Below are positions 150-61,680 of a DNA stretch of 64,000 nt, piece by piece; the stretch's first letter is position 1; each line of letters opens with the position of its first letter. The stretch comes from Scyliorhinus canicula (lineage: Eukaryota): positions 201,837,703 through 201,901,702 of the forward strand of contig NC_052151.1 of assembly GCF_902713615.1 (NCBI RefSeq), written 5' to 3'. The position numbers and the translations under genes were made by a program. The notes below the pieces were generated by a model, which saw only the letters and a program-made list of their open reading frames with translations, had not been told where the DNA came from and did not search any database.

Positions 150-470
150 TTCAGAATCAGGCTGCCCGTCTCCCTGTGAATGGATCCCTGGGTCAGTCAG
201 TCTCCCTGTCTCCGGTAATCCCACATCGATTGATGGACATCGAGGTTATCTGGAAACAATCTTCACGCAGTCTCAGAATAGCACGATACAGCAAGGAACA
301 TGTCAGTTACGTTGGGTCTGAGGATTACCAGAAACGGATCAAATTTCATCCTGGGAACTTCAGTCTGCAAATCAATGACTTACAGAGAGAGGATGCTGGG
401 AGTTATGAGGTGTTTTTAACAAGAGATTCAGGAGAGGAAACTACAGAGACCATTCAACTGGACGTGTACG
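150..470 (+). CDS. Gene A exon 2: CD2/SLAM-type N-terminal IgV domain (no canonical disulfide)
   Basis: Polypyrimidine/CAG acceptor at 147-149 and GTAAGT donor at 471; 321 nt, phase 1-1. QNQAARLPVNGSLGQSVSL..VIWK..RIKFHPGNFSLQINDLQREDAGSYEV..TIQLDVY has the Ig V-set DxGxY motif and lacks the B- and F-strand Cys, as in CD2/SLAM V domains. Confidence 0.92.
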
Positions 471-16142: not shown

Positions 16143-16268
16143 AGCCAGTAACATTCCAGTATGAAACTTTGCTCTATATACTGTTGGTCTTCGTCCTCAT
16201 ACTCTCCTGCCTACTGATTATCTTGTGCAAACGAGCTTCAAGAAAGAAAAGGGACTTGACGTTAGGAG
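16143..16268 (+). CDS. Gene A exon 4: stalk, transmembrane and juxtamembrane
   Basis: Acceptor tttcccttttgcag ends 16142. (E)PVTFQYETLLYILLVFVLILSCLLIILCKRASRKKRDLTLG is a ~21-aa uncharged hydrophobic run followed by a basic stop-transfer. It ends at AG|GCAAGT (GC donor) in phase 1, matching both neighbouring exons. Confidence 0.82.
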
Positions 16269-16454
16269 GCAAGTTTTGTGAACGCATCCCTGTGTATGAG
16301 GGACTCATAGTACTGAGGTGATGTAATTGTGCCTGTGGACTGGGTGAGCGTTAAAGAATGGAGACTGATTCAGGGATAGTACTGAGGTGAAAGAGTGGGA
16401 ATGCGGACAGTGGGAAGAATTGATGGGAAGGGTGAGTGTGTGGGAGTGCTGGGG

Positions 16455-18309: not shown

Positions 18310-18428
18310 ATTCGAATAAGCCGGGAAAAGAGCAGGAATGCGCCTGCGAGCCACAGACCATTTATGCTTTGGTGCAGCCAATGAAGAAACATCAAGAGAC
18401 ACGCCCTCCCCCAGAAGGAAATGAGATG
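18310..18428 (+). CDS. Gene A exon 5: cytoplasmic, ITSM 1 (TIYALV)
   Basis: Acceptor ctattcttccctttcaaag ends 18309, donor ATG|GTAAAG at 18429; phase 1-0. (D)SNKPGKEQECACEPQTIYALVQPMKKHQETRPPPEGNEM. Confidence 0.82.
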
Positions 18429-18879
18429 GTAAAGGGAAATGGGACACACATTTCTCCCCCAGAGACTCTACATTCCCTGAATCACTGATTCCCTCTCAAT
18501 CTCCTGATAATCTTCTCATCCGTTCCTGAACTGCTGTACTGAGTCCTTCAAACACGCACAGTAAGATCCCAGCATTCAATGAAGGCACCAGCTGCCTCAT
18601 TTTTCAAAGTGACCTCCACCAGTGAGAATGGCGATGGCAGAGGTTGCGTGGAAATACCAAAACTCTCTGAGGCGGACACACATCACCCCGATCAGGATGG
18701 CCATTGACAGTTCATTCACTGACACTGGGCCAAACATCATCCTAAACAGCATTGAGGGATGTTCAATGCCATTATCTTCACTGAAATCCCCGCCCCCCCC
18801 CCCCCCCTCACCCCTCACCCTGGGGGCTACCATTGACCAGAAACTTGGCTAGCCATATTAATACTGTGGCTACAAGAGC

Positions 18880-19325
18880 AGGTCAGAGGCTCGGAATCCT
18901 GTGGCGAGTAACTCACCTCCTGACTCCCCAAAGAGCATTCTAACCCTCCACCACCGGCGCACAGTGGCAGCCGTGTGTGCCATTACAAGATTCACGGTAG
19001 GAACTCGCCAAAGTTCCTTAGACGCCACCTTCCAAACCCATGACCACGAACATAAAGAAAGACAAGGGCAGCAGATACCTGGGAACCCCACCACCTGGAG
19101 GTTCCCCTCCAAGTCACTCACCGTCCTGACTGGGAAATATATCGGCCGTTCCTTCACTGTCGCTGGGGCAACATTGGAACTCCCTCCCGAACAGCACCGT
19201 GGGTGTACCTACACCTCAGGGACTGCAGCCGTTCAAGATGGCGGCTCACCACCACCTTCTGAAGGGCAATTAGAGACAGACAATAAATTCTGGCCTTGTC
19301 AGTGATGCCCACATCCCATCCCATA
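18880..19325 (+). mobile_element. 3' fragment of a CR1/L2-superclade LINE
   Basis: LHHRRTVAAVCAITR..YIGRSFTVAGATLELPP and tail CTGGCCTTGTCAGTGATGCCCACATCCC; related pieces at about 21130-21520, 22500-22570, 25200-25635 (+) and 58775-59460 (-). Confidence 0.7.
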
Positions 19326-19379
19326 AAAAACAGAATCTTTCTTTCTTTCACTGATCAGACTTTTCTACTTGTTCTGTAG

Positions 19380-19475
19380 GTAGCGACGGAGACTGAGACA
19401 CCATTCACAGTCTACGATACGGTCAAGAACCCTGGAGTCCCAGTTTCTCAACTGCCTGATCAACAATGTGATTAA
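19380..19475 (+). CDS. Gene A exon 6: cytoplasmic, ITSM 2 (TVYDTV) and stop
   Basis: Acceptor ttttctacttgttctgtag ends 19379; phase 0, matching exon 5. VATETETPFTVYDTVKNPGVPVSQLPDQQCD*, TAA at 19473-19475. Confidence 0.82.
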   Translation, partial: VATETETPFTVYDTVKNPGVPVSQLPDQQCD

Positions 19476-48130: not shown

Positions 48131-48556
48131 GTTTCAGCAGCCGAGTCACTTCAAAGATTGGGGAAAATCCTCTATTTCAATGATCGGCCCAGATTGAACA
48201 ACACGGAGAAGATGACCCCCAGTCCACTCTACGCCCGGGTCATTCAGAGCCGTGAAATTCAGTCTGTGTGAAGATTGCAGTGAGCACACATCAGGAAAAT
48301 CTGAGATCTCTCTTCCTGAATATGGGATATTCCCTCTTTCTGTCATTCTCAATCTTGTCACGGGGCTGAAAGTCAGCCTCACGTTGGCTGCAGCTGGGAT
48401 CTTGCTGTGCATGGCTGGGTGTTTTGTGATTTTTCCCATTGGGGTAACAGTGGACTGCGCTCTGAAAACAGCCTGGGACAGTTTGAGATAGTTCCTGAGA
48501 CAGCTGGAACACTCCCTTCACTCCTTTCACCTCCTCAATACGCGTCCTCCATCTCT

Positions 48557-48603
48557 TCATCCATCCAGCTCAGAGAGAGGTCCCTCTGTCCCTCCACGCA
48601 GCT
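48557..48603 (-). CDS. Putative alternative/ancestral last exon of gene B (QLRGGTEGPLSELDG*)
   Basis: Acceptor gactccctcacag is conserved in the paralogous copy (exon start 30270). It is in phase 1 with a repaired exon-4 donor, but that donor is disrupted in this sequence. Confidence 0.4.
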
Positions 48604-50065
48604 CTGTGAGGGAGTCAGGAATCACAATGTCAGCACAGAGGAGAGGGAGAGAACAGGAGAGGGAGAGGGAAGGGGAGGGGAGGGTGAGGAGGGAGAGGGA
48701 GGGATAGGGGAAGGAAGAGAGGGGAGGGAGAGGAGATGAAAGGGGAGGGAGTGCAGAGGGAGGAGATGATGGGAGGGAGAGGGTGCGGGAGGGAAGTGAA
48801 GGGAGATTTGAGAGGAGGGAAAGTTGAGGGAAAGGGAGGTGAAGGAGAGAATGGGGAAAGACGTTTTGAAGGAACAGGAGGAGAGCAAGGGAGAGGTGAG
48901 GAAAGTGACAGAGACAGGAGGGTGAGGGAGATGGGAAGGGGAGGGAATGGAAGAGAATGTGGAGTGGAGGGTCAATGGAGGAGGGCGCAGGAGGGGGGGA
49001 TGGATTGCAGGAAGTGAAGAAGATTTTAAATGAAGGGAGGTGGGGGAGGGGGATATGAGTCTACGGAAGGAGTCACCAACCTTTCCGAGTTTGCATCCAC
49101 GTTCTCCGACCCCGCAACTGGGTGCCTGAGAGAGGGCAGAGAGAAGGAGGGAGATCAGTGAGCTGACACAGTGCTGGATCCTAATCTCTATCGGTCTGTT
49201 TCTTCTCTTCATTGTCCTCTCTCTCCGTCACTCTACCTTCAATCTCCCTCTCACCCTACTTCTCATTCATTCTCTCTCCCATTCCATCTCACCACGCCAC
49301 ACTCATTCATTATCTCTCTCTCTTACTACCCCCACCGCTCGTCCTCTTTGCTGTGTCTCTCAACCCTGCCTCTCTCAACCACTTCTCTCTCACATTCTTT
49401 TCTCTCTGTCTGTTTCTCACTCTCTCTCCTTCCCCATGTCTGCGTGGGTTTCCTCGGGGTGCTCCAGTTTCCTGCCAAAGCCCAAAGGTGTGAAGAACAG
49501 TTGGATTGACCATCCTAAATTGCCCCTTAGTGTCCAAAGATATGGAGGTTGGGTAGATTGGTTATCTTGTGTCTCAGGACGTGCAGTTTTGGTGGGTTGC
49601 GGGGTTGTTCGATAGTTCGGGGGAGGGGGCCGAGATAGGGTCGGTACAGGGTTGTTGAGTCGAATGGCCTCATTCTGCACTGTAGGGGTTCTGTAGATTC
49701 TCTCTGTCACTTTTCCCCTCAATCACAGCCTCTCTTTTGTGGTCTTTCTCTCTCTTTCTGTCTCCTGCCCACTCATTCTTTCTCTCATTCTCTCCTCTCT
49801 CACTCAATGCATCGCTCAAATTGTCTCCCACCCTGGCTCTCGCAATCTCTCTCTCTTTCTTTAACTCTTTCAATTATTGGCCCTCTTTCTCTTCCAATCT
49901 CCCTCCCTCTCTTTTCTCCAACTCTACCTCCCTTTACCTCTCTCTCTGTCTCGCTCTGTCTCATTCTCTATTTGTCTCTCTTTCTCCATCACTCTGTCTC
50001 CATCATAATATCTAGGAATATTGAACATTAACACTCAGTACAATTCAGAAATGATGTCTGAATAC

Positions 50066-50175
50066 TCAACGTTTGCTGATCACTTGGACGATGACAATGA
50101 CCGAGAGCAGAATAGTCAGGATGGTGACAGAAATGATCAACTTCACATAACACGGAGAGCAACAGGATTGTTCAG
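50066..50175 (-). CDS. Gene B exon 4: Cys-rich stalk, TM and 3-aa tail, stop
   Basis: Strong acceptor tttctttccccttccccctccccag in phase 1. (A)EQSCCSPCYVKLIISVTILTILLSVIVIVQVISKR*; TGA at 50068-50066. Not in the ORF track; read by hand. Confidence 0.8.
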
Positions 50176-50270
50176 CTGGGGAGGGGGAAGGGGAAAGAAA
50201 AATAATTTTATAGAGACATATTTCAGAGCTCAGTCACAAAACCTTTCATCAATTCTTGACTCATCAAAGA

Positions 50271-53200
50271 ACATAGAACATAGAACACTACAGCGCAGTG
50301 TGGGCCCTTCGGCCCTCGATGTTGCGCCGACCTGTGAAACCATCTGAAGCCTATCTGACCTACACTATTCCATTTTCATCCATATGTCTATCCAGTGACC
50401 ACTTAAATGCCCTTAAAGTTGGCGAGTCTACTACTGTTGCAGGCAGGGTGTTCCACACCCCTACTACTCTCTGAGTAAAGAAACTGCCTCTGACATCTGT
50501 CCTATATCTACCACCCCTCAATTTAAAGCTATGTCCCCTCGTGTTCGTCATCACCATCCGAGGAAAAATATTCTCACTGTCCACCCTATCTAACCCTCTG
50601 ACTATCTTATATGTCTCTATTAAGTCACCTCTCAGCCTTTTCCTCTCTAACGAAAACAACCTCAAGTCCCTGAGCCTTTCCTCGTAAGACCTTCCTTCCA
50701 TACCAGGCAACATCCTAGTAAATCTCCTCTGAACCCTTTCCAAAGCTTCCACATCCTTCCTATAATGTGGTGACCAGAACTGCACACAGTACTCCAGGTG
50801 CGGCCGCACCAGAGTTATGTACAGCTGCAGCATGACCTTGTGGTTCCGAAACTCAATCCCTCTGCTTATAAAGGCTAGCACACCATATGCCTTCTTAACA
50901 GCCCTATAAACCTGGGTGGCAACTTTCAGGGATTTATGTACCTGGATGCCGAGATCTCTCTGTTCATCTACACTACCAAGAATCTTGCCATTAGCCCAGT
51001 ACTCTGCATTCCTGTTACTCCTTCCAAAGTGAACCATAAGAACATAAGAACATAAGAACATAAGAACTAGGAGCAGGAGTAGGCCATCTGGCCCCTCGAG
51101 CCTGCTCGGCCATTCAATGAGATCATGGCTGATCTTTTGTGGACTCAGCTCCACTTTCCGGCCTGAACACCATAACCCTTAATCCCTTTATTCTTCAAAA
51201 AACTATCTATCTTTACCTTAAAAACATGTAATGAAGGAGCCTCAACTGCTTCACTGGGCAAGGAATTCCATAGATTCACAACCCTTTGGGTGAAGAAGTT
51301 CCTCCTAAACTCAGTTCTAAATCTACTTCCCCTTATTTTGAGGCTATGCCCCCTAGTTCTGCTGTCACCCGCCAGTGGAAACAAGCTGCCCGCATCTATC
51401 CTATCTATTCCCTTCATAATTTTAAATGTTTCTATAAGATCCCCCCTCATCCTTCTAAATTCCAACGAGTACAGTCCCAGTCTACTCAACCTCTCCTCAT
51501 AATCCAACCCCTTCAGCTCTGGGATTAACCTAGTGAATCTCCTCTGCACACCCTCCAGCGCCAGTACGTCCTTTCTCAAGTAAGGAGACCAAAACTGAAC
51601 ACAATACTCCAGGTGTGGCCGCACTAACACCTTATACAATTGCAACATAACCTCCCTAGTCTTAAACTCCATCCCTCCAGCAATGAAGGACAAAATTCCA
51701 TTTGCCTTCTTAATCACCTGTTGCACTTGTAAACCAACCTTCTGTGACTCATGCACTAGCACACCCAAGTCTCTGTGAACAGCGGCATGCTTTAATATTT
51801 TATCGTTTAAATAATAATCCCGTTTGCTGTTATTCCTACCAAAATGGATAACCTCACATTTGTCAACATTGTATTCCATCTGCCAGACCCGAGCCCATTC
51901 ACTTAACCTATCCAAATCCCTCTGCAGACTTACAGTATCCTCTGCACTTTTCGCTTTACCACTCATCTTAGTGTCTTCTGCAAACTTGGACACATTGCCC
52001 TTGGTCCCCAACTCCAAATCATCAATGTAAATTGTGAACAATTGTGGGCCCAACACGGATCCCTGAGGGACACCACTAGCTACTGATCGCCAACCAGAGA
52101 AACACCCATTTATCCCAACTCTTTGCTTTCTATTAATTAATCAATCCTCTATCAATGCTACTACTTTACCCTTAATGCCATGCATCTTTTTCTTATGCAG
52201 CAACCTTTTGTGTGGCACCTTGTCAAAGGCTTTCTGGAAATCCAGATATACCACATCCATCGGCTCCCCGTTATCTACTGCACTGGTAATGTCCTCAAAA
52301 AATTCCACTAAATTAGTTAGGCACGACCTGCCTTTTACGAACCCATGCTGCGTCTGCCCAATGGGACAATTTCTATCCAGATGCCTCGCAATTTCTTCCT
52401 TGATGATAGATTCCAGCATCTTCCCTATTACCGAAGTTAAACTCACTGGCCTATAATTTCCTGCTTTCTGCCTACCTCCTTTTTTAAACAGTGGCGTCAC
52501 GTTTGCTAATTTCCAATCCACCGGGACCACCCCAGAGTCTAGTGAATTTCGGTAAATTATCACTAGTGCATCTGCAATTTCCCTAGCCATCTCTTTTAGC
52601 ACTCTGGGATGCATTCCATCAGGGCCAGGAGACTTGTCTACCTTTAGCCTCATTAGCTTGCCCATCACTCCCTCCTTAGTGATAACAATCGTCTCAAGGT
52701 CCTCACCTGTCATTGCCTCATTTCTATCAGTCACTGGCATGTTATTTGTGTCTTCCACTGTGAAGACCGACCCAAAAAACCTGTTCAGTTCCTCAGCCAT
52801 TTCCTCATTTCCCATTATTAAAACTCCCTTCTCATCCTCTAAAGGACCAATATTTACCTTAGCCATTCTTTTTTGTCTTATATGTTTGTAAAAACTTTTA
52901 CTGTCTGTTTTTATATTCTGAGCAAGTTTACTCTCATACTCTATCTTACTCTTCTTTATAGCTTTTTTAGTAGCTTTCTGTTGCCCCCTAAAGATTTCCC
53001 AGTCCTCTAATCTCCCAGCAATCTTTGCCACTTTATATGCTTTTTCCTTCAATTTGATACTCTCCCTTATTTCCTTAGATATCCACGGTCGATTTTCCCT
53101 CTTTCTTCCGTCCTTCCTTTTTGTTGGTATAAACCTTTGCTGAGCACTGTGAAAAATCGCTTGGAAGGTTCTCCACTGCTCCTCAACTGTTCCACCATAA

Positions 53201-55810
53201 AGTCTTAGCTCCCAGTCTACCTTAGCTAGTTCTTCTCTCATCCCCTTGTAATCTCCTTTGTTTAAACACAAAACACTAGTATTTGATTTTACTTTCTCAC
53301 CCTCCATCTGTATTTTAAATTCCACCATATTGTGATCGCTCCTTCCGAGAGGATCCCTAACCACCTCACACTTTTCCGCATTAAACTCCATCTGCCACCT
53401 CTCAGCCCAGCTCTGCAGCTTATCTATGTCCCTCTGTATCTTATAACATCCTTCAGCACTATCCACAACTCCACCGACCTTCGTGTCATCTGCAAATTTA
53501 CTAACCCATCCTTCTACACCCTCTTCCAGGTCATTTATAAAAATGACAAACAGCAGTGGCCCCAAAACAGATCCTTGCGGTACACCACTAGTAACTGAAC
53601 TCCAGGATGAACATTTGCTATCAACCACCACCCTCTGTCTTCTTTCAGCTAGCCAATTACTGATCCAAACCGCTAAATCACCTTCAATTCCATACTTACT
53701 TATTTTCTGCAATAGCCTACCGTGGGGAACCTTATCAAACGCCTTACTGAAATCCATATACACCACATCAACAGCTTTACCCTGATCCACCTGTTTGGTC
53801 ACCTTCTCAAAAAACTCAATAAGGTTTGTGAGGCATGACCTACCCTTCACAAAACCGTGTTGAGTATCGCTAATCAACTTGTTCTTTTCAAGATGATTAT
53901 AAACCCTATCTCTTATAACCTTTTCCAACATTTTACCCACAACCGAAGTAAGGCTCACAGGTCAATAATTACCAGGGTTGTCTCTACTCCCCTTCTTGAA
54001 CAAGGGGACAACATTTGCTATCCTCCAGTCTTCCAGCACTATTCCTGTCGACAAAGACGACATAAAGATCAAGGACAAAGGCTCTGCAATCTCCTCCCTG
54101 GCTTCCCAGAGAATCCTAGGATAAATCCCATCTGGCCCAGGGGACTTATCTATTTTGACATTTTCTAAAATTGCTAACACCTCCTCCTTTTGAACCTCTA
54201 TTCCATCTAGCCTGGTCGACTGAACCTGAGTGTTCTCCTCGACAACATTGTCTTTCTCCAGTGTAAACACTGATGAAAAATATCCATTTAATGCTTCCCC
54301 TATCTCCTCTGATTCCACACACAACTTTCCACTACTATCCTTGATTGGCCCTAATCTTACTCTAGTCATTCTTTTGTTCCTGATATACCTATAGAAAGCC
54401 TTAGGGTTTTCCTTGATCCTATCCGCCAACGACTTTTCGTGTCCTCTCCTCGCTCTTCTTAACTCTCCCTTTAGGTCCTTCCTGGCTAACTTGTAACTCT
54501 CAAGTGCCCTAACTGAGCCTTCATGTCTCATCCTAACATAAGCCTTCTTCTTCCTCTTGACAAGTGCTTCAACTTCCTTAGTAAACCACGGTTCCCTTGC
54601 TCGACAACTTCCTCCCTGCCTGACAGGTACATACCTATCAAGGACACGCAGTAGCTGTTCCTTGAAAAAGCTCCACATTTCGATTGTACCCATCCCCTGC
54701 AGTTTCCTTCCCCATCCTATACATCCTAAATCTTGCCGAATAGCATCATAAGTGCCCTTCGCCCAGCTATATTTATTGCCTTGCGGTATATACCTATCCC
54801 TGCCCATCACTAAAGTGAACATAACCGAATTGTGATCACTATCACCAAAGTGCTCACCTACATCTAAATCTAACACCTGGCCGGGTTCATTACCCAGTAC
54901 CAAATCCAATGTGGCCTCGCCCCTTGTTGGCCTGTCTACATACTGTGTCAGAAAACCCTCCTGCACACACTGCACAAAAACTGACCCATCTATAGCACTC
55001 GAACTATAGTATTTCCAGTCAATATTTGGAAAGTTAAAGTCCCCCATAACAACTACCCTGTTACTCTCGCTCCTGTCAAGAATCATCTTTGCAATCCTTT
55101 CCTCTACATCTCTGGAACTATTCGGAGGTCTATAGACAACTCCCAACAGGGTGACCTCTCCTCTACTGTTCCTCACCTCGGCCCATACTGCCTCAGTAGA
55201 CGAGTCCTCAAGCGTCCTTTCTACCGCCGTAATACTTTCCTTGATTAACAATGCCACACCCCCCCCTCTTTTACCATCTTCTCTGTTCTTACAGAAACAT
55301 CTAAATCCTGGAACCTGCAACAACCATTCCTGTCCCTGCTCTACCCATGTCTCCGAAATCGCCACAACATCGAGATCCCAGGTACAAACCCATGCTGCAA
55401 GCTCACCCACCTTATTCCGGATGCTCCTAGCGTTGAAGTAGACACACTTCAAACCAGCGCCCTGCTTGCCGGTGCCCTCTTTCGAATTTTTAAACCTATC
55501 CCTGACCTCATTACTCTCAACATCCTGTACACTGGGACTACAATTTAGGTTCCCATACCCCTGCTGAATTAGTTTAAACTCCCCCGAAGAGCACTAGCAA
55601 ATCTCCCCCCCAGGATATTGGTACCCCTCTGGTTCAGGTGAAGACCATCCTGTTTGTAGAGGTCCCACCTACCCCAGAATGAGCCCCAATTATCCAGGAA
55701 ACCAAAACCCTCCCTCCTGCACCATCCCTGTAGCCACGTGTTCAACTCCTCTCTCTCCTTATTTCTCACTTCGCTAGCACGTGGCACGGGTAACAACCCA
55801 GAGATAACAG
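50271..55810 (-). mobile_element. CR1 LINE (ORF1 end, EN, RT, 3' tail) split by a nested CR1
   Basis: ORF1 esterase end 55569-55810; ORF2 MKCVYFNARSIRNK..VAISETW; RT to 53364, resuming at 51031; tail (CATAGAA)n at 50271. Confidence 0.92.
51037..53358 (-). mobile_element. Younger 5'-truncated CR1 nested in the CR1 RT
   Basis: Tail (CATAAGAA)n at 51037-51067, flanked by AACCA (51032-51036 and 53359-53363); removing it restores CCAAAGTG-AACCA-CCTCACAC. Confidence 0.88.
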
Positions 55811-55844
55811 AGATAATAATCATAGGGTTCGTAATTCTCCCTCT

Positions 55845-56780
55845 ACACTGCCCCATCAAACACTCCCAGGACAGGTACTGCATGGGGTTAGATACAGAAT
55901 AAATCTCCCTCTACGCTGTCCCCATCAAATATTCCCAGGGCAGGCACAGCACGGGGTTAGATACAGAGTAAAGCTCACTCTACACTGTCCCCATCAAACA
56001 CTCCCAGGACAGGTACAGCACAGGGTTAGATACAGAGTAAAGCTCCCTCTACACTGTCCCCATCAAACACTCCCAGGACAGGTACAGCAAGGGGTTAGAT
56101 ACAGAGTAAAGCTCCCTCTACACTGTACCCATCAAACACTCCCAGGACAGGTACAGCACGGGGTTAGATACAGAGTAAAGCTCCCTCGACACTGTCCCCA
56201 TCAAACACTCGCAGGACAGGTACAGCACGGGGTTAGATACAGAGTAAAGCTCCCTCTACACTGTCCCCATCAAACATTCCCAGGGCAGGCACAGCACGGG
56301 GTTAGATACAGAGTAAAGCTCCCTCTACACTGTCCCTATCAAACACTCGCAGGACAGGTACAGCACGGGGTTAGATACAGAGTAAAGCTCCCTCTACACT
56401 GTCCCCATCAAACACTCCCAGGGCAGGCACAGCACGGGGTTAGATACAGAGTAAAGCTCCCAATCCACTGTCTCCATCAAACACTCCCAGGGCAGGCACA
56501 GCACGGGGTTAGATACAGAGTAAAGCTCCCTCTACACTGTCCCCATCAAACACTCCCAGGACAGGGACAGCATGGGGTTAGATACAGAGTAAAGCTCCCT
56601 CTACACTGTCCCCATCAAACACTCCCAGGACAGGTACAGCACGGGGTTAGATACAGAGTAAAGCTCCCTCGGCACTGTCCCCATCAAACACTCGCAGGAC
56701 AGGTACAGCACGGGGTTAGATACAGAGTAAAGCTCCCTCGGCACTGTCCCCATCAAACACTCGCAGGACAGGTACAGCAT
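55845..56780 (-). repeat. 69-bp tandem satellite, about 13 units, gene B intron 3
   Basis: Reverse complement of the 2795-4713 unit; starts about 50 nt after the C2 donor. Confidence 0.97.
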
Positions 56781-56832: not shown

Positions 56833-57132
56833 CAGGTTTGATTCCTTTACAGACGCCACTCACGTTGAATTGTGCAGTGTTGAATTGTGCAGTGCCCTCA
56901 CTGACTGGGTTCCTGGCCTCACACACGTACACAGCGTCGTTGGTCTCCTCTGTGAAGTGAAGCTGTAATTCCTGTCCATTGTCGGAGAGATGATGGGAGC
57001 TGCCGTTTCTCAATGCTTCTTGTCCCCTCCACCATCTGAAGCTGATGTTGTCGCCTGTGTTCACTGAGCAGGTCAGGGTCAGGTTACAATTCTCGATGAG
57101 TTTATAGCTGATCTTTGTTCCTGTCACAGGCT
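56833..57132 (-). CDS. Gene B exon 3: SLAM-type IgC2 domain
   Basis: 300 nt, phase 1-1, acceptor tggcag, donor GTGAGT. EPVTGTKISYKLIENCNLTLTCSV..YVCEARNPVSEG..SGVCKGIKP is about 80% identical to the gene A C2. Confidence 0.92.
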
Positions 57133-60611: not shown

Positions 60612-60932
60612 CGTACACGTCCAGTTGAATGGTCTCTGGAGTTTCCACTCCTGAAACTTTTGTTAAAACCACCTCATAACTCCCAGCATCCTCTCTCTGT
60701 AAGTCACTGATTTGCAGACTGAAGTTCCCAGGATGAAATTTGATCCGTTTCTGGTAATCCTCAGACCCAAAGTAACTGACATGTTTCTTGCTGTATCGTG
60801 CTATTCTGAGTCTGCGTGAAGATCGTTTCCAGATAACCTCGACATCCATCAATCCATGTGGGATTACTGGAGACAGGGAGATTGACTGACCCAGGGATCC
60901 ATTCACAGGGAGACGAGCAGCCTGATTCTGAA
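60612..60932 (-). CDS. Gene B exon 2: CD2/SLAM-type IgV domain
   Basis: 321 nt, phase 1-1, with the same splice sites as gene A exon 2; 16 nt differences from it (hand count). Confidence 0.92.
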
Positions 60933-61625: not shown

Positions 61626-61680
61626 AGACTGATAGGGAGAGAGCCAGCGAACAACAGATGAACAATTCCCCAAACTCCAT
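61626..61680 (-). CDS. Gene B exon 1: signal peptide
   Basis: gaagATGG start at 61680 encodes MEFGELFICCSLALSLSV plus T, followed by a GTGAGT donor. The 55-nt phase-1 exon joins the V exon in frame (T+TT=Phe). Confidence 0.82.

What the first reader, a model, noticed from the sequence alone, without database searches (positions are those of the whole stretch)
50066..50175. Gene B TM: Lys at the outer edge, Cys-rich stalk, no tail - activating adaptor partner or ligand/decoy
Seen: EQSCCSPC-YVK-LIISVTILTILLSVIVIVQVI-SKR*. Established: FcRgamma-coupled receptors (GPVI NLVRICL, FcalphaRI and LILRA NLIRM, NKp46) carry a basic residue near the extracellular end of the TM and have short tails, whereas CD58 and CD48 are tailless ligands. 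Three extra stalk Cys could form covalent dimers. Inference: B is either an ITAM-adaptor-coupled activating counterpart of A or a tailless ligand/decoy. Mammalian SLAMs do not normally signal through a charged TM, so the first option would be unusual.
Basis: partly seen in the sequence, partly recalled or inferred. Interest (0 to 1): 0.72.

Follow-up and report, generated by a model that had tools for sequence, protein, structure and literature searches.

The report
Catshark SLAM receptor's conserved charged membrane anchor
The stretch is the real, expressed membrane-anchor exon of an annotated catshark SLAM-family immune-receptor gene. It does not end the protein, because two small tail exons follow, and its unusually conserved anchor suggests, without proving, that it works through a partner protein in the membrane.

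Summary
The peptide is in the sequence as described, on the minus strand behind an AG acceptor. The exon ends at 50071 at a donor AAAC|GTTGAGT. RNA contigs from two studies, with a third showing one junction, splice it to two small exons (49125-49081 and 48603-48557). The result is a 31-residue tail with no tyrosine.

The gene is NCBI's 290-aa "Ly-9-like" protein of Scyliorhinus canicula.

The membrane module is found in 15 proteins from 12 shark and ray species:
- a Cys three residues before a K or R at the outer edge, conserved in all of them;
- a His near the inner edge, which is Gln in this catshark gene;
- short tails with no conserved Tyr motif.

Its membrane segment is more conserved (mean identity 0.58) than that of the partner genes (0.28). 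It is also more conserved than its own ectodomain. The V+C2 ectodomains instead cluster by species with an ITSM-bearing or uncharged partner gene, which is the signature of paired receptors.

Coupling to an acidic-TM adaptor is the best inference but was not tested. The NxxR motif of FcRgamma-coupled receptors is absent. A ligand or decoy role remains possible.

The scan noted a similar pair 188 kb away (s1-253624).

The parts
61626..61680 (-). Gene B exon 1: start codon and signal peptide (18 residues plus 1 base), donor T|GTGAGT, phase 1
   Evidence: Exact match to P0157 residues 1-18; donor read
60612..60932 (-). Gene B exon 2: V-set Ig domain with no cysteine (CD2/SLAM type), phase 1-1
   Evidence: Pfam V-set 9.5e-12; 96% nucleotide identity to gene A's V exon at 79-490
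56833..57132 (-). Gene B exon 3: C2-type Ig domain with four cysteines, phase 1-1
   Evidence: Pfam Ig_3, I-set and ig hits; 85% nucleotide identity to gene A's C2 exon
50360..55883 (-). Nested LINE-type reverse-transcriptase and endonuclease ORFs that fill most of intron 3 between the C2 and TM exons
   Evidence: Long ORFs with RT-like translations. The homology between A and B ends at 55831, at the shared 69-bp satellite
50071..50175 (-). Gene B exon 4, the finding: Cys-rich stalk, conserved Cys234-x-x-Lys237, a 22-residue hydrophobic segment with Gln256, then Ser-Lys and the first base of Arg. Length 105 nt, phase 1-1
   Evidence: covered by RNA contigs in X1 and X2; homologues in 12 species
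50066..50070 (-). First five bases of intron 4 (GTTGA).
   Evidence: Joint 49125/50071 in two runs. The same C|GTTGAGTAT donor occurs in Heptranchias
49081..49125 (-). Gene B exon 5: 45 nt, a basic juxtamembrane stretch (seven Arg/Lys in 15 residues), phase 1-1
   Evidence: P0157 residues 262-275; splice sites read; joints on both sides in X1 and X2
48557..48603 (-). Gene B exon 6, coding part: 15 residues ending in ELDG, then the stop codon. The 3' UTR runs on below 48300
   Evidence: P0157 residues 276-290; the 1116-nt contig of X2 runs on past 48300
150..470 (+). Gene A (partner gene) V exon
   Evidence: 87.7% amino-acid identity to B's V domain
16143..16268 (+). Gene A TM exon: uncharged TM, GC-AG intron after it, unrelated in sequence to B's TM exon
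   Evidence: matches P0010; no alignable similarity to B's exon
18310..19475 (+). Gene A's two cytoplasmic exons (18310-18428 and 19380-19475), each with an ITSM (TIYALV and TVYDTV)
   Evidence: P0010

Best explanation
Shown: window 50175-50071 (minus strand) is exon 4 of a six-exon catshark SLAM/CD2-family gene, NCBI 'Ly-9-like', 290 aa. It encodes the stalk and the membrane segment. It is spliced to two small exons that add a basic, tyrosine-free tail of 31 residues in all, ending in ELDG. The membrane module (Cys-x-x-Lys/Arg at the outer edge, His or Gln near the inner edge, then I-S) occurs throughout sharks and rays and is more conserved than the ectodomain it carries. The ectodomain, by contrast, is kept alike within each species to that of a neighbouring gene with a different TM and tail. 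In the catshark that neighbour is gene A, which has two ITSMs. Inferred: B is the motif-less member of a paired-receptor couple. It binds what A binds, possibly A itself, as SLAM receptors are usually self-ligands. It signals not through its own tail but through a partner chain held by its conserved membrane segment. The most likely contact is between the Lys/Arg and the outer-leaflet Asp of an FcRgamma/CD3zeta-type ITAM dimer. The conserved membrane-proximal Cys may make a covalent dimer.
For: The gene model and the splicing are supported by the exact mapping of P0157, consensus-like splice sites all in phase 1, and spliced contigs in X1 and X2 plus a junction-like loose end in X3, which makes three studies. 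The tail has no Tyr and so no ITSM, ITIM or ITAM. The module was found in 15 proteins of 12 elasmobranch species. K or R is present in 15 of 15, the Cys at -3 in 15 of 15, and His in 14 of 15, and all tails are 2-43 residues without a conserved Tyr motif. An RNA variant in X1 changes the Lys to Arg, so the charge is kept (table 3). TM identity over 36 species pairs averages 0.58 for B-type genes and 0.28 for the partner genes' TMs. Between Scyliorhinus canicula and S. torazame the TM is 84% identical and the ectodomain 72%. In the ectodomain tree B pairs with its own species' non-B gene in 8 lineages, most with 100/99-100 support, and the B label needs at least 9 changes. In the catshark the V exon is 96% identical between A and B, the C2 exon 85%, and the TM exons are unrelated. 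A basic residue at the N-terminal end of the TM together with a short tail is how FcRgamma-coupled receptors are built, which has been shown experimentally even in Xenopus (PMC2413239).
Against: No adaptor binding was tested here. The NxxR motif that defines FcRgamma-coupled TMs is not met, because Cys replaces Asn. The 22 hydrophobic residues after Lys237 are enough to cross a bilayer, so the Lys may sit at the interface rather than in the membrane. Outer-edge K or R also occurs in relatives with ITSM tails, for example P0178, and in other uncharged-type TMs. Concerted evolution of the ectodomain is equally expected if B is only a ligand or decoy for a homophilic A. Shark sequences evolve slowly, which inflates conservation, although the comparison with partner TMs controls for this. 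The partner-type TMs compared may not all be orthologous to one another.
Confidence: 0.5

Rival explanations
1. B is a non-signalling ligand, decoy or competitor, comparable to CD48, CD58 or the short-tailed SLAMF8/SLAMF9. It presents the same V domain as A on the cell surface. It engages A in trans or blocks it in cis, and its membrane segment serves only as an anchor.
For: The tail has no signalling motif. NCBI names several relatives 'CD48 antigen-like', which is automatic naming. The V domains of A and B are predicted to bind each other with weak support: ipSAE 0.59 against a best control of 0.00, a mark reached by 51 of 78 solved complexes and 2 of 108 mismatches, although scores of 0.60 or below are more often wrong than right and may come from memory of solved SLAM dimers. 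The three runs agree in at least 97% of contacts and the partner's pLDDT is at least 84. Keeping the ectodomain alike to A's is what a ligand of a homophilic receptor would need. The Lys may be merely interfacial.
Against: A plain anchor has no reason to keep Cys-x-x-K/R, the inner His and the I-S motif across sharks and rays. It also has no reason to be more conserved than the ectodomain and twice as conserved as the partner genes' TMs.
Confidence: 0.27
2. The reader's literal reading applies to a real alternative isoform. If intron 4 is retained, the protein ends at SKR directly after the hydrophobic segment. That gives a tailless or GPI-signal-like C-terminus, as with the two CD58 isoforms.
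For: The in-frame TGA sits inside the donor and is identical in Heptranchias (C|GTTGAGTAT). The donor is the weakest in the gene, with C at -1 and T at +3. NCBI models in Mustelus (P0158, which ends in ISKR) and Cetorhinus (P0152) stop at or just after the TM exon.
Against: In X1 and X2 the exon is joined to exon 5, and depth next to the exon in the intron is nil. The caveat is that contigs drop rare forms. Intron 4 holds no AATAAA or ATTAAA signal. The raw-read RNA run gave no coverage and so could not decide.
Confidence: 0.1
3. B signals through its own short tail. The basic juxtamembrane cluster would bind ERM or cytoskeletal proteins or acidic lipids, and the conserved ELDG end would be a docking or sorting motif. 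The conserved TM would then serve homodimerisation through the Cys.
For: Seven Arg/Lys lie in the 15 residues of exon 5. The end E-L/V-D-G/A is conserved from Hexanchiformes to Carcharhiniformes, including at the nucleotide level.
Against: Ray members have quite different 15-16-residue tails that end in HKAE or HKTE, yet they keep the TM module. The part shared by the whole family is therefore the membrane segment and not the tail.
Confidence: 0.12

Closest known systems
FcRgamma-coupled Ig receptors with the 'TM1' NxxR membrane segment (LILRA2, PIR-A, NKp46, GPVI, OSCAR, FcalphaRI, Xenopus XFL; PMC2413239)
   Same: Type I Ig-superfamily receptor with a basic residue in the first turn of the TM and a short tail without a motif. 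These receptors occur beside inhibitory-type relatives that have similar ectodomains.
   Different: Cys stands where the Asn of NxxR should be. Galean sharks have Lys rather than Arg. There is an extra conserved His or Gln near the inner leaflet. The hydrophobic run after the basic residue is long enough to span the membrane alone. The ectodomain is SLAM/CD2-type rather than FcR/LRC-type. Association with FcRgamma was not tested.
Paired receptors kept alike by gene conversion (Siglec-5/14, Siglec-11/16, CEACAM1/CEACAM3, CD300A/C, KIR; PMC5701461, PMC4042635, PMC2832619, PMC5112662)
   Same: Two neighbouring genes have near-identical ligand-binding domains and unrelated TM and tail modules. The ectodomains cluster by species while the signalling modules are old.
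   Different: This pair belongs to the SLAM/CD2 family, for which the papers searched describe no such pair. The partner carries ITSMs, which are switch motifs, rather than plain ITIMs. The activating nature of B is inferred only.
Mammalian SLAM family: SLAMF1-7 with ITSM tails, SLAMF8/9 with short tails, and GPI-anchored CD48
   Same: A V domain without a disulfide followed by a C2 domain with two disulfides, all introns in phase 1, and a cluster with ITSM-bearing members. Gene A is a typical ITSM receptor.
   Different: From general knowledge, no mammalian SLAM member is known to rely on a charged TM residue. B's TM and tail module has no detectable counterpart outside elasmobranchs in the searches run. 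B is not GPI-anchored in the transcripts seen.

Membership tests
SLAM/CD2 family of Ig receptors | N-terminal V-set domain that lacks the canonical disulfide, followed by a C2-set domain with two disulfides | tested here: met
   The V exon has no Cys and the C2 exon has four Cys. Pfam V-set 9.5e-12 and Ig_3 5.9e-13. The Receptor_2B4 hit is below its cut-off.
SLAM/CD2 family of Ig receptors | Nearest relatives are SLAM-family proteins, and the gene lies in a cluster with ITSM-bearing members | tested here: met
   All close hits carry SLAM, Ly-9, 2B4 or CD48-like names, and the bird hits are SLAMF1. Gene A in the same window has two ITSMs.
ITSM-signalling SLAM receptors (SLAMF1-7 type) | One or more TxYxx(V/I) motifs in the cytoplasmic tail | tested here: not met
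   B's tail has no tyrosine. No ITSM-like motif lies on the minus strand downstream of the gene.
FcRgamma-coupled 'TM1' receptors | NxxR motif at the N-terminal end of the TM | tested here: not met
   The motif here is C-x-x-K in galean sharks and C-x-x-R in Heptranchias and rays. The residue at -3 is an invariant Cys. The motif is defined in PMC2413239.
FcRgamma-coupled 'TM1' receptors | Short cytoplasmic tail without tyrosine motifs | tested here: met
   The tail is 31 residues in the catshark and 2-43 residues across the family, with no conserved Tyr.
FcRgamma-coupled 'TM1' receptors | Physical association with FcRgamma, and surface expression or signalling that depends on it | not testable with these tools
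This needs co-expression and co-immunoprecipitation.
DAP12/DAP10-coupled receptors | Lys or Arg in the central third of the TM | tested here: not met
   The only basic residue lies directly before the 22-residue hydrophobic run. The centre holds only Ser and Thr.
GPI-anchored or tailless CD48/CD58-type ligands | The protein ends with the hydrophobic segment and has no cytoplasmic tail | tested here: not met
   Transcripts in X1 and X2 splice on to two tail exons. A read-through isoform cannot be excluded from contigs.
Paired (activating/inhibitory-type) receptors | Two linked genes with closely similar ectodomains but different TM and tail modules | tested here: met
   Between A and B the V exon is 96% and the C2 exon 85% identical at nucleotide level, and the TM exons are unrelated.
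Paired (activating/inhibitory-type) receptors | Ectodomains evolve in concert within species while the signalling modules are older than the species | tested here: met
   The tree pairs B with the non-B gene of the same species in 8 lineages and needs at least 9 label changes. The TM module is shared by sharks and rays.
Paired (activating/inhibitory-type) receptors | Opposite signalling outputs of the two members | not testable with these tools
   This needs functional assays.

The most novel reading that the evidence does not exclude
Sharks and rays keep an old, dedicated lineage of adaptor-coupled SLAM-family receptors. Their C-x-x-K/R...H membrane module is a docking site for an ITAM chain, perhaps the two-ITAM FcRgamma encoded on the same chromosome. 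Their ectodomains are rewritten again and again by gene conversion from ITSM-bearing neighbours. That would make SLAM receptors a true activating/switch paired-receptor system in the oldest jawed vertebrates, an arrangement that mammals lack. It would also name a client for shark FcRgamma in animals reported to lack classical Fc receptors and LRC receptors (PMC4016189).
Probability: 0.35. Interest if true: 0.75.

Novelty: new variant of a known kind. Interest (0 to 1): 0.55.

Why it matters
Mammalian SLAM receptors signal through their own ITSM tails and the SAP-family adaptors (general knowledge, not tested here). From general knowledge, none is known to use a charged membrane segment. If the shark B-type genes are adaptor-coupled, paired-receptor logic was applied to the SLAM family early in jawed-vertebrate history and later lost. 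In that logic an activating twin shadows an inhibitory or switch receptor and is kept identical in its binding face.

It would also offer a concrete partner for the ITAM adaptors of cartilaginous fish. A 2014 survey could not find the usual client receptors, FcR and LRC, in sharks (PMC4016189).

For annotation, the practical point is smaller. The gene is already in NCBI's set under an uninformative 'Ly-9-like' name. The supposedly tailless end comes from reading through a weak but conserved donor.

Tried and rejected
- **Homology of the two TM exons.** I tested whether B's TM exon is a diverged copy of A's. blastn and MAFFT show no similarity beyond chance, so this was rejected.
- **Module on other protein architectures.** A region-restricted search with residues 224-290 of P0157 found only P0157 itself and the S. 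torazame orthologue. A profile search with ten full-length members found one more ray member and nothing outside elasmobranchs. Both searches depend on shared words, so this blank is weak evidence.
- **ESM Atlas look-alikes of the TM and tail part.** The best score was 0.86, for an unnamed cluster, and nothing was usable.
- **Raw-read RNA run X18.** It gave no reads on any exon, so it says nothing about intron retention or strand.
- **Genomic DNA of other species.** DNA of the Mustelus, S. torazame and Cetorhinus genes could not be fetched because the files are too large. Only Heptranchias was readable.
- **Read-through of gene A's TM exon versus B-type tails.** A seeming likeness (LGGK...IP) gave no BLASTP alignment and was dropped.
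- **Literature.** Five searches found no paper on SLAM-family paired receptors, on SLAM receptors with a charged TM, or on shark SLAM genes.
- **Complex prediction on the V domains of A and B.** The verdict was weak support only: 0.59 against a best control of 0.00 (the calibration counts are given under the first rival explanation). It may reflect memory of solved SLAM dimers.
- **Complex with an ITAM adaptor.** This was not attempted.
- **Downstream ITSM exons.** A scan of the minus strand below 50066 found none.

Full report
**The observation**

It is preceded by a pyrimidine tract and an AG, so the exon begins at 50175 with two bases that complete a split codon.

Upstream on the same strand lie two more exons. 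One is a cysteine-free V exon (60932-60612) and the other a four-cysteine C2 exon (57132-56833). Both are phase 1-1 with good GTAAGT and GTGAGT donors. The frames fit together.

**What the gene is**

An HMMER search with the C2 exon, followed by a word-index search, identified the window as Scyliorhinus canicula. Gene B is NCBI protein P0157, 'T-lymphocyte surface antigen Ly-9-like', 290 aa. It maps without a mismatch to six exons:
- leader, 61680-61626;
- V exon;
- C2 exon;
- the TM exon, 50175-50071;
- a 45-nt exon, 49125-49081;
- a last exon from 48603, with the stop at 48559-48557.

The TM exon ends one base into an Arg codon, at the donor AAAC|GTTGAGT.

Gene A, on the plus strand, is P0010, 'SLAM-like isoform X2'. 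It has an uncharged TM exon (16143-16268, followed by a GC-AG intron) and two ITSM exons.

**Is the exon used, and how?**

I laid four runs on 48300-50400.
- In X2, one 1116-nt contig covers 50176-50070, then 49124-49081, then 48603-48300, and runs on beyond.
- X1 shows the same two joints. Both joints have CT..AC ends on the plus strand, which is GT..AG for the gene.
- X3 has a loose end at 48605 whose letters match exon 5 with one change.

That makes two studies with both junctions and a third with one. Depth in the intron beside the TM exon is nil. The raw-read oligo-dT run X18 had no reads on any exon and so decides nothing.

The transcripts seen therefore encode a cytoplasmic part of 31 residues. 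It consists of Ser-Lys-Arg, a stretch with seven Arg/Lys in 15 residues, and an acidic end ...SELDG. It has no tyrosine, so there is no ITSM, ITIM or ITAM. 'No tail' is wrong. 'No signalling motif' is right.

**The membrane module is old and constrained**

Fifteen proteins from 12 elasmobranch species carry a homologous stalk-TM module. The species are:
- Carcharhiniformes: two Scyliorhinus species and Mustelus;
- Lamniformes: Cetorhinus and Carcharodon;
- Hexanchiformes: Heptranchias;
- rays: Pristis, Hemitrygon, two Mobula species, Rhinoraja and Amblyraja.

In all 15 a Cys stands three residues before a basic residue at the start of the hydrophobic run. The basic residue is Lys in galean sharks and Arg in Heptranchias and rays. 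His lies four residues before the end of the run in 14 of 15, and the catshark gene has Gln there. The motif I-S closes the run in all of them. Of the catshark's three stalk cysteines, only the last is conserved.

The X1 contig differs from the window at 50142 and 50140, which turns Lys-Leu into Arg-Met. The charge is kept (table 3).

Over 36 species pairs, the 25-residue TM window is on average 58% identical among B-type genes. For the TMs of the partner genes from the same species the figure is 28%. Between the two Scyliorhinus species the TM is 84% identical, while the V+C2 ectodomain is only 72% identical. A membrane segment that is more conserved than the binding domain it carries is not what a mere anchor looks like.

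In Heptranchias (locus L001) the donor C|GTTGAGTAT, with its TGA, is identical to the catshark's. Short intron blocks on both sides of the exon are also conserved. The last exon of Heptranchias corresponds to catshark exons 5 and 6 fused.

**The ectodomain tells the opposite story**

Within the window, the V exons of A and B are 96% identical in DNA, the C2 exons 85%, and the shared 69-bp satellite about 92%. Homology stops there. The TM exons are unrelated.

I built a maximum-likelihood tree of V+C2 from 28 genes. It puts each B-type gene next to a non-B gene of its own species or genus: S. canicula, S. torazame, Mustelus, Cetorhinus, Carcharodon, Heptranchias, Pristis and Rhinoraja. Most of these pairings have 100/99-100 support. 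The B label needs 10 changes on the tree, and at least 9 are forced by well-supported branches.

The TM module is clearly one old lineage. The ectodomains must therefore have been homogenised repeatedly with their neighbours by gene conversion or exon replacement. This is the known signature of paired receptors such as Siglec-5/14, Siglec-11/16 and CEACAM1/3 (PMC4042635, PMC5701461, PMC2832619).

Between the V exons of A and B, 13 of 16 differences change an amino acid.

**How it most likely works**

The steps that are shown are the gene structure, the splicing, the motif-free tail, the conserved polar TM positions, and the concerted ectodomain.

The rest is inferred. I think B holds a partner chain through its membrane segment. 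A basic residue in the first turn of the TM plus a short tail is the build of FcRgamma-coupled receptors, and in Xenopus such TMs were shown to bind FcRgamma (PMC2413239). From general knowledge, the Asp of FcRgamma and CD3zeta lies in the outer leaflet, four residues after their dimer-forming Cys. In B the Lys lies three residues after the conserved Cys, so the depths would match.

I did not test that note.

Several points argue for caution:
- The NxxR motif itself is not met.
- The hydrophobic run after the Lys is long enough to span the membrane alone.
- Outer-edge K or R is also seen in ITSM-bearing relatives.
- A ligand or decoy for a homophilic A would also need to keep the same V domain.

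A fold of A's V domain with B's V domain gave weak support for binding: 0.59 against a best control of 0.00 (calibration counts are under the first rival explanation). This is compatible with both readings, and it may come from memory of solved SLAM dimers.

I put adaptor or partner coupling at about 0.5, a pure ligand or decoy at about 0.27, signalling through the tail itself at about 0.12, and a functional tailless isoform at about 0.1.

**Comparison and novelty**

B is a member of the SLAM/CD2 family by domain build, relatives and location. It is not an ITSM receptor. It does not meet the NxxR definition of the FcRgamma class or the central-lysine definition of the DAP12 class. In the transcripts seen, it is not a tailless CD48-type molecule. 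It does meet the two sequence criteria for paired receptors.

Five literature searches found no description of SLAM-family paired receptors, or of charged-TM SLAM genes, in any vertebrate. The library is limited to open papers. The gene itself is already annotated by NCBI. The scan has also noted a similar catshark pair 188 kb away (s1-253624). I therefore rate this a new variant of a known kind, of moderate interest.

Noticed in passing
window 50140-50142 (minus-strand codons for Lys237-Leu238): The contig of RNA run X1 reads Arg-Met instead of Lys-Leu and has 5 differences in 107 nt of the TM exon. Its piece covering exon 6 and the 3' UTR differs at only 1 of 306 positions. This is either a divergent allele or a small conversion patch from a paralogue.
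   Followed up: partly
window 50176-50215 and 50030-50070; L001 43590-43632 and 43751-43790: Intron blocks next to the TM exon are conserved between catshark and Heptranchias: TATGTCTCTATAAA upstream, and GTTGAGTAT...TCTGATTGTACTG downstream. They are at least as well conserved as the exon itself. Together with the weak donor this hints at regulated or alternative splicing.
   Followed up: partly
window 48604-49080: The 477-nt CT-rich, low-complexity intron 5 of the catshark splits what is a single last exon in Heptranchias (L001 50163-50266). The intron looks like a gain or an expansion inside a former exon.
   Followed up: partly
window 16269-16270: Gene A's TM exon is followed by a GC-AG intron (GGAG|GCAAGT). 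NCBI's protein P0010 uses it.
   Followed up: yes
window 152-469 against 60930-60613: The V exons of A and B differ at 16 positions, 13 of them amino-acid changing (pN 0.053, pS 0.041). The binding domain is therefore not under purifying selection between the two genes.
   Followed up: partly
P0188 (S. canicula, on another chromosome); P0183, P0185 and P0143 (Mobula): Other short-tailed SLAM-like proteins show a second kind of charged TM, with an Arg four to five residues into the hydrophobic run (for example LVIR...). Elasmobranch SLAM genes may therefore hold more than one adaptor-type lineage.
   Followed up: no
window 50360-55883: Nested LINE-type elements, with endonuclease and reverse-transcriptase ORFs up to 605 aa, fill intron 3 of gene B. 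They separate the C2 exon from the TM exon by 6.6 kb.
   Followed up: no
window 49430-49560 and 50270-50400: Very high contig depth in all RNA runs (thousands) marks short, widely expressed repeat families inside intron 4 and intron 3. This is not expression of gene B.
   Followed up: no
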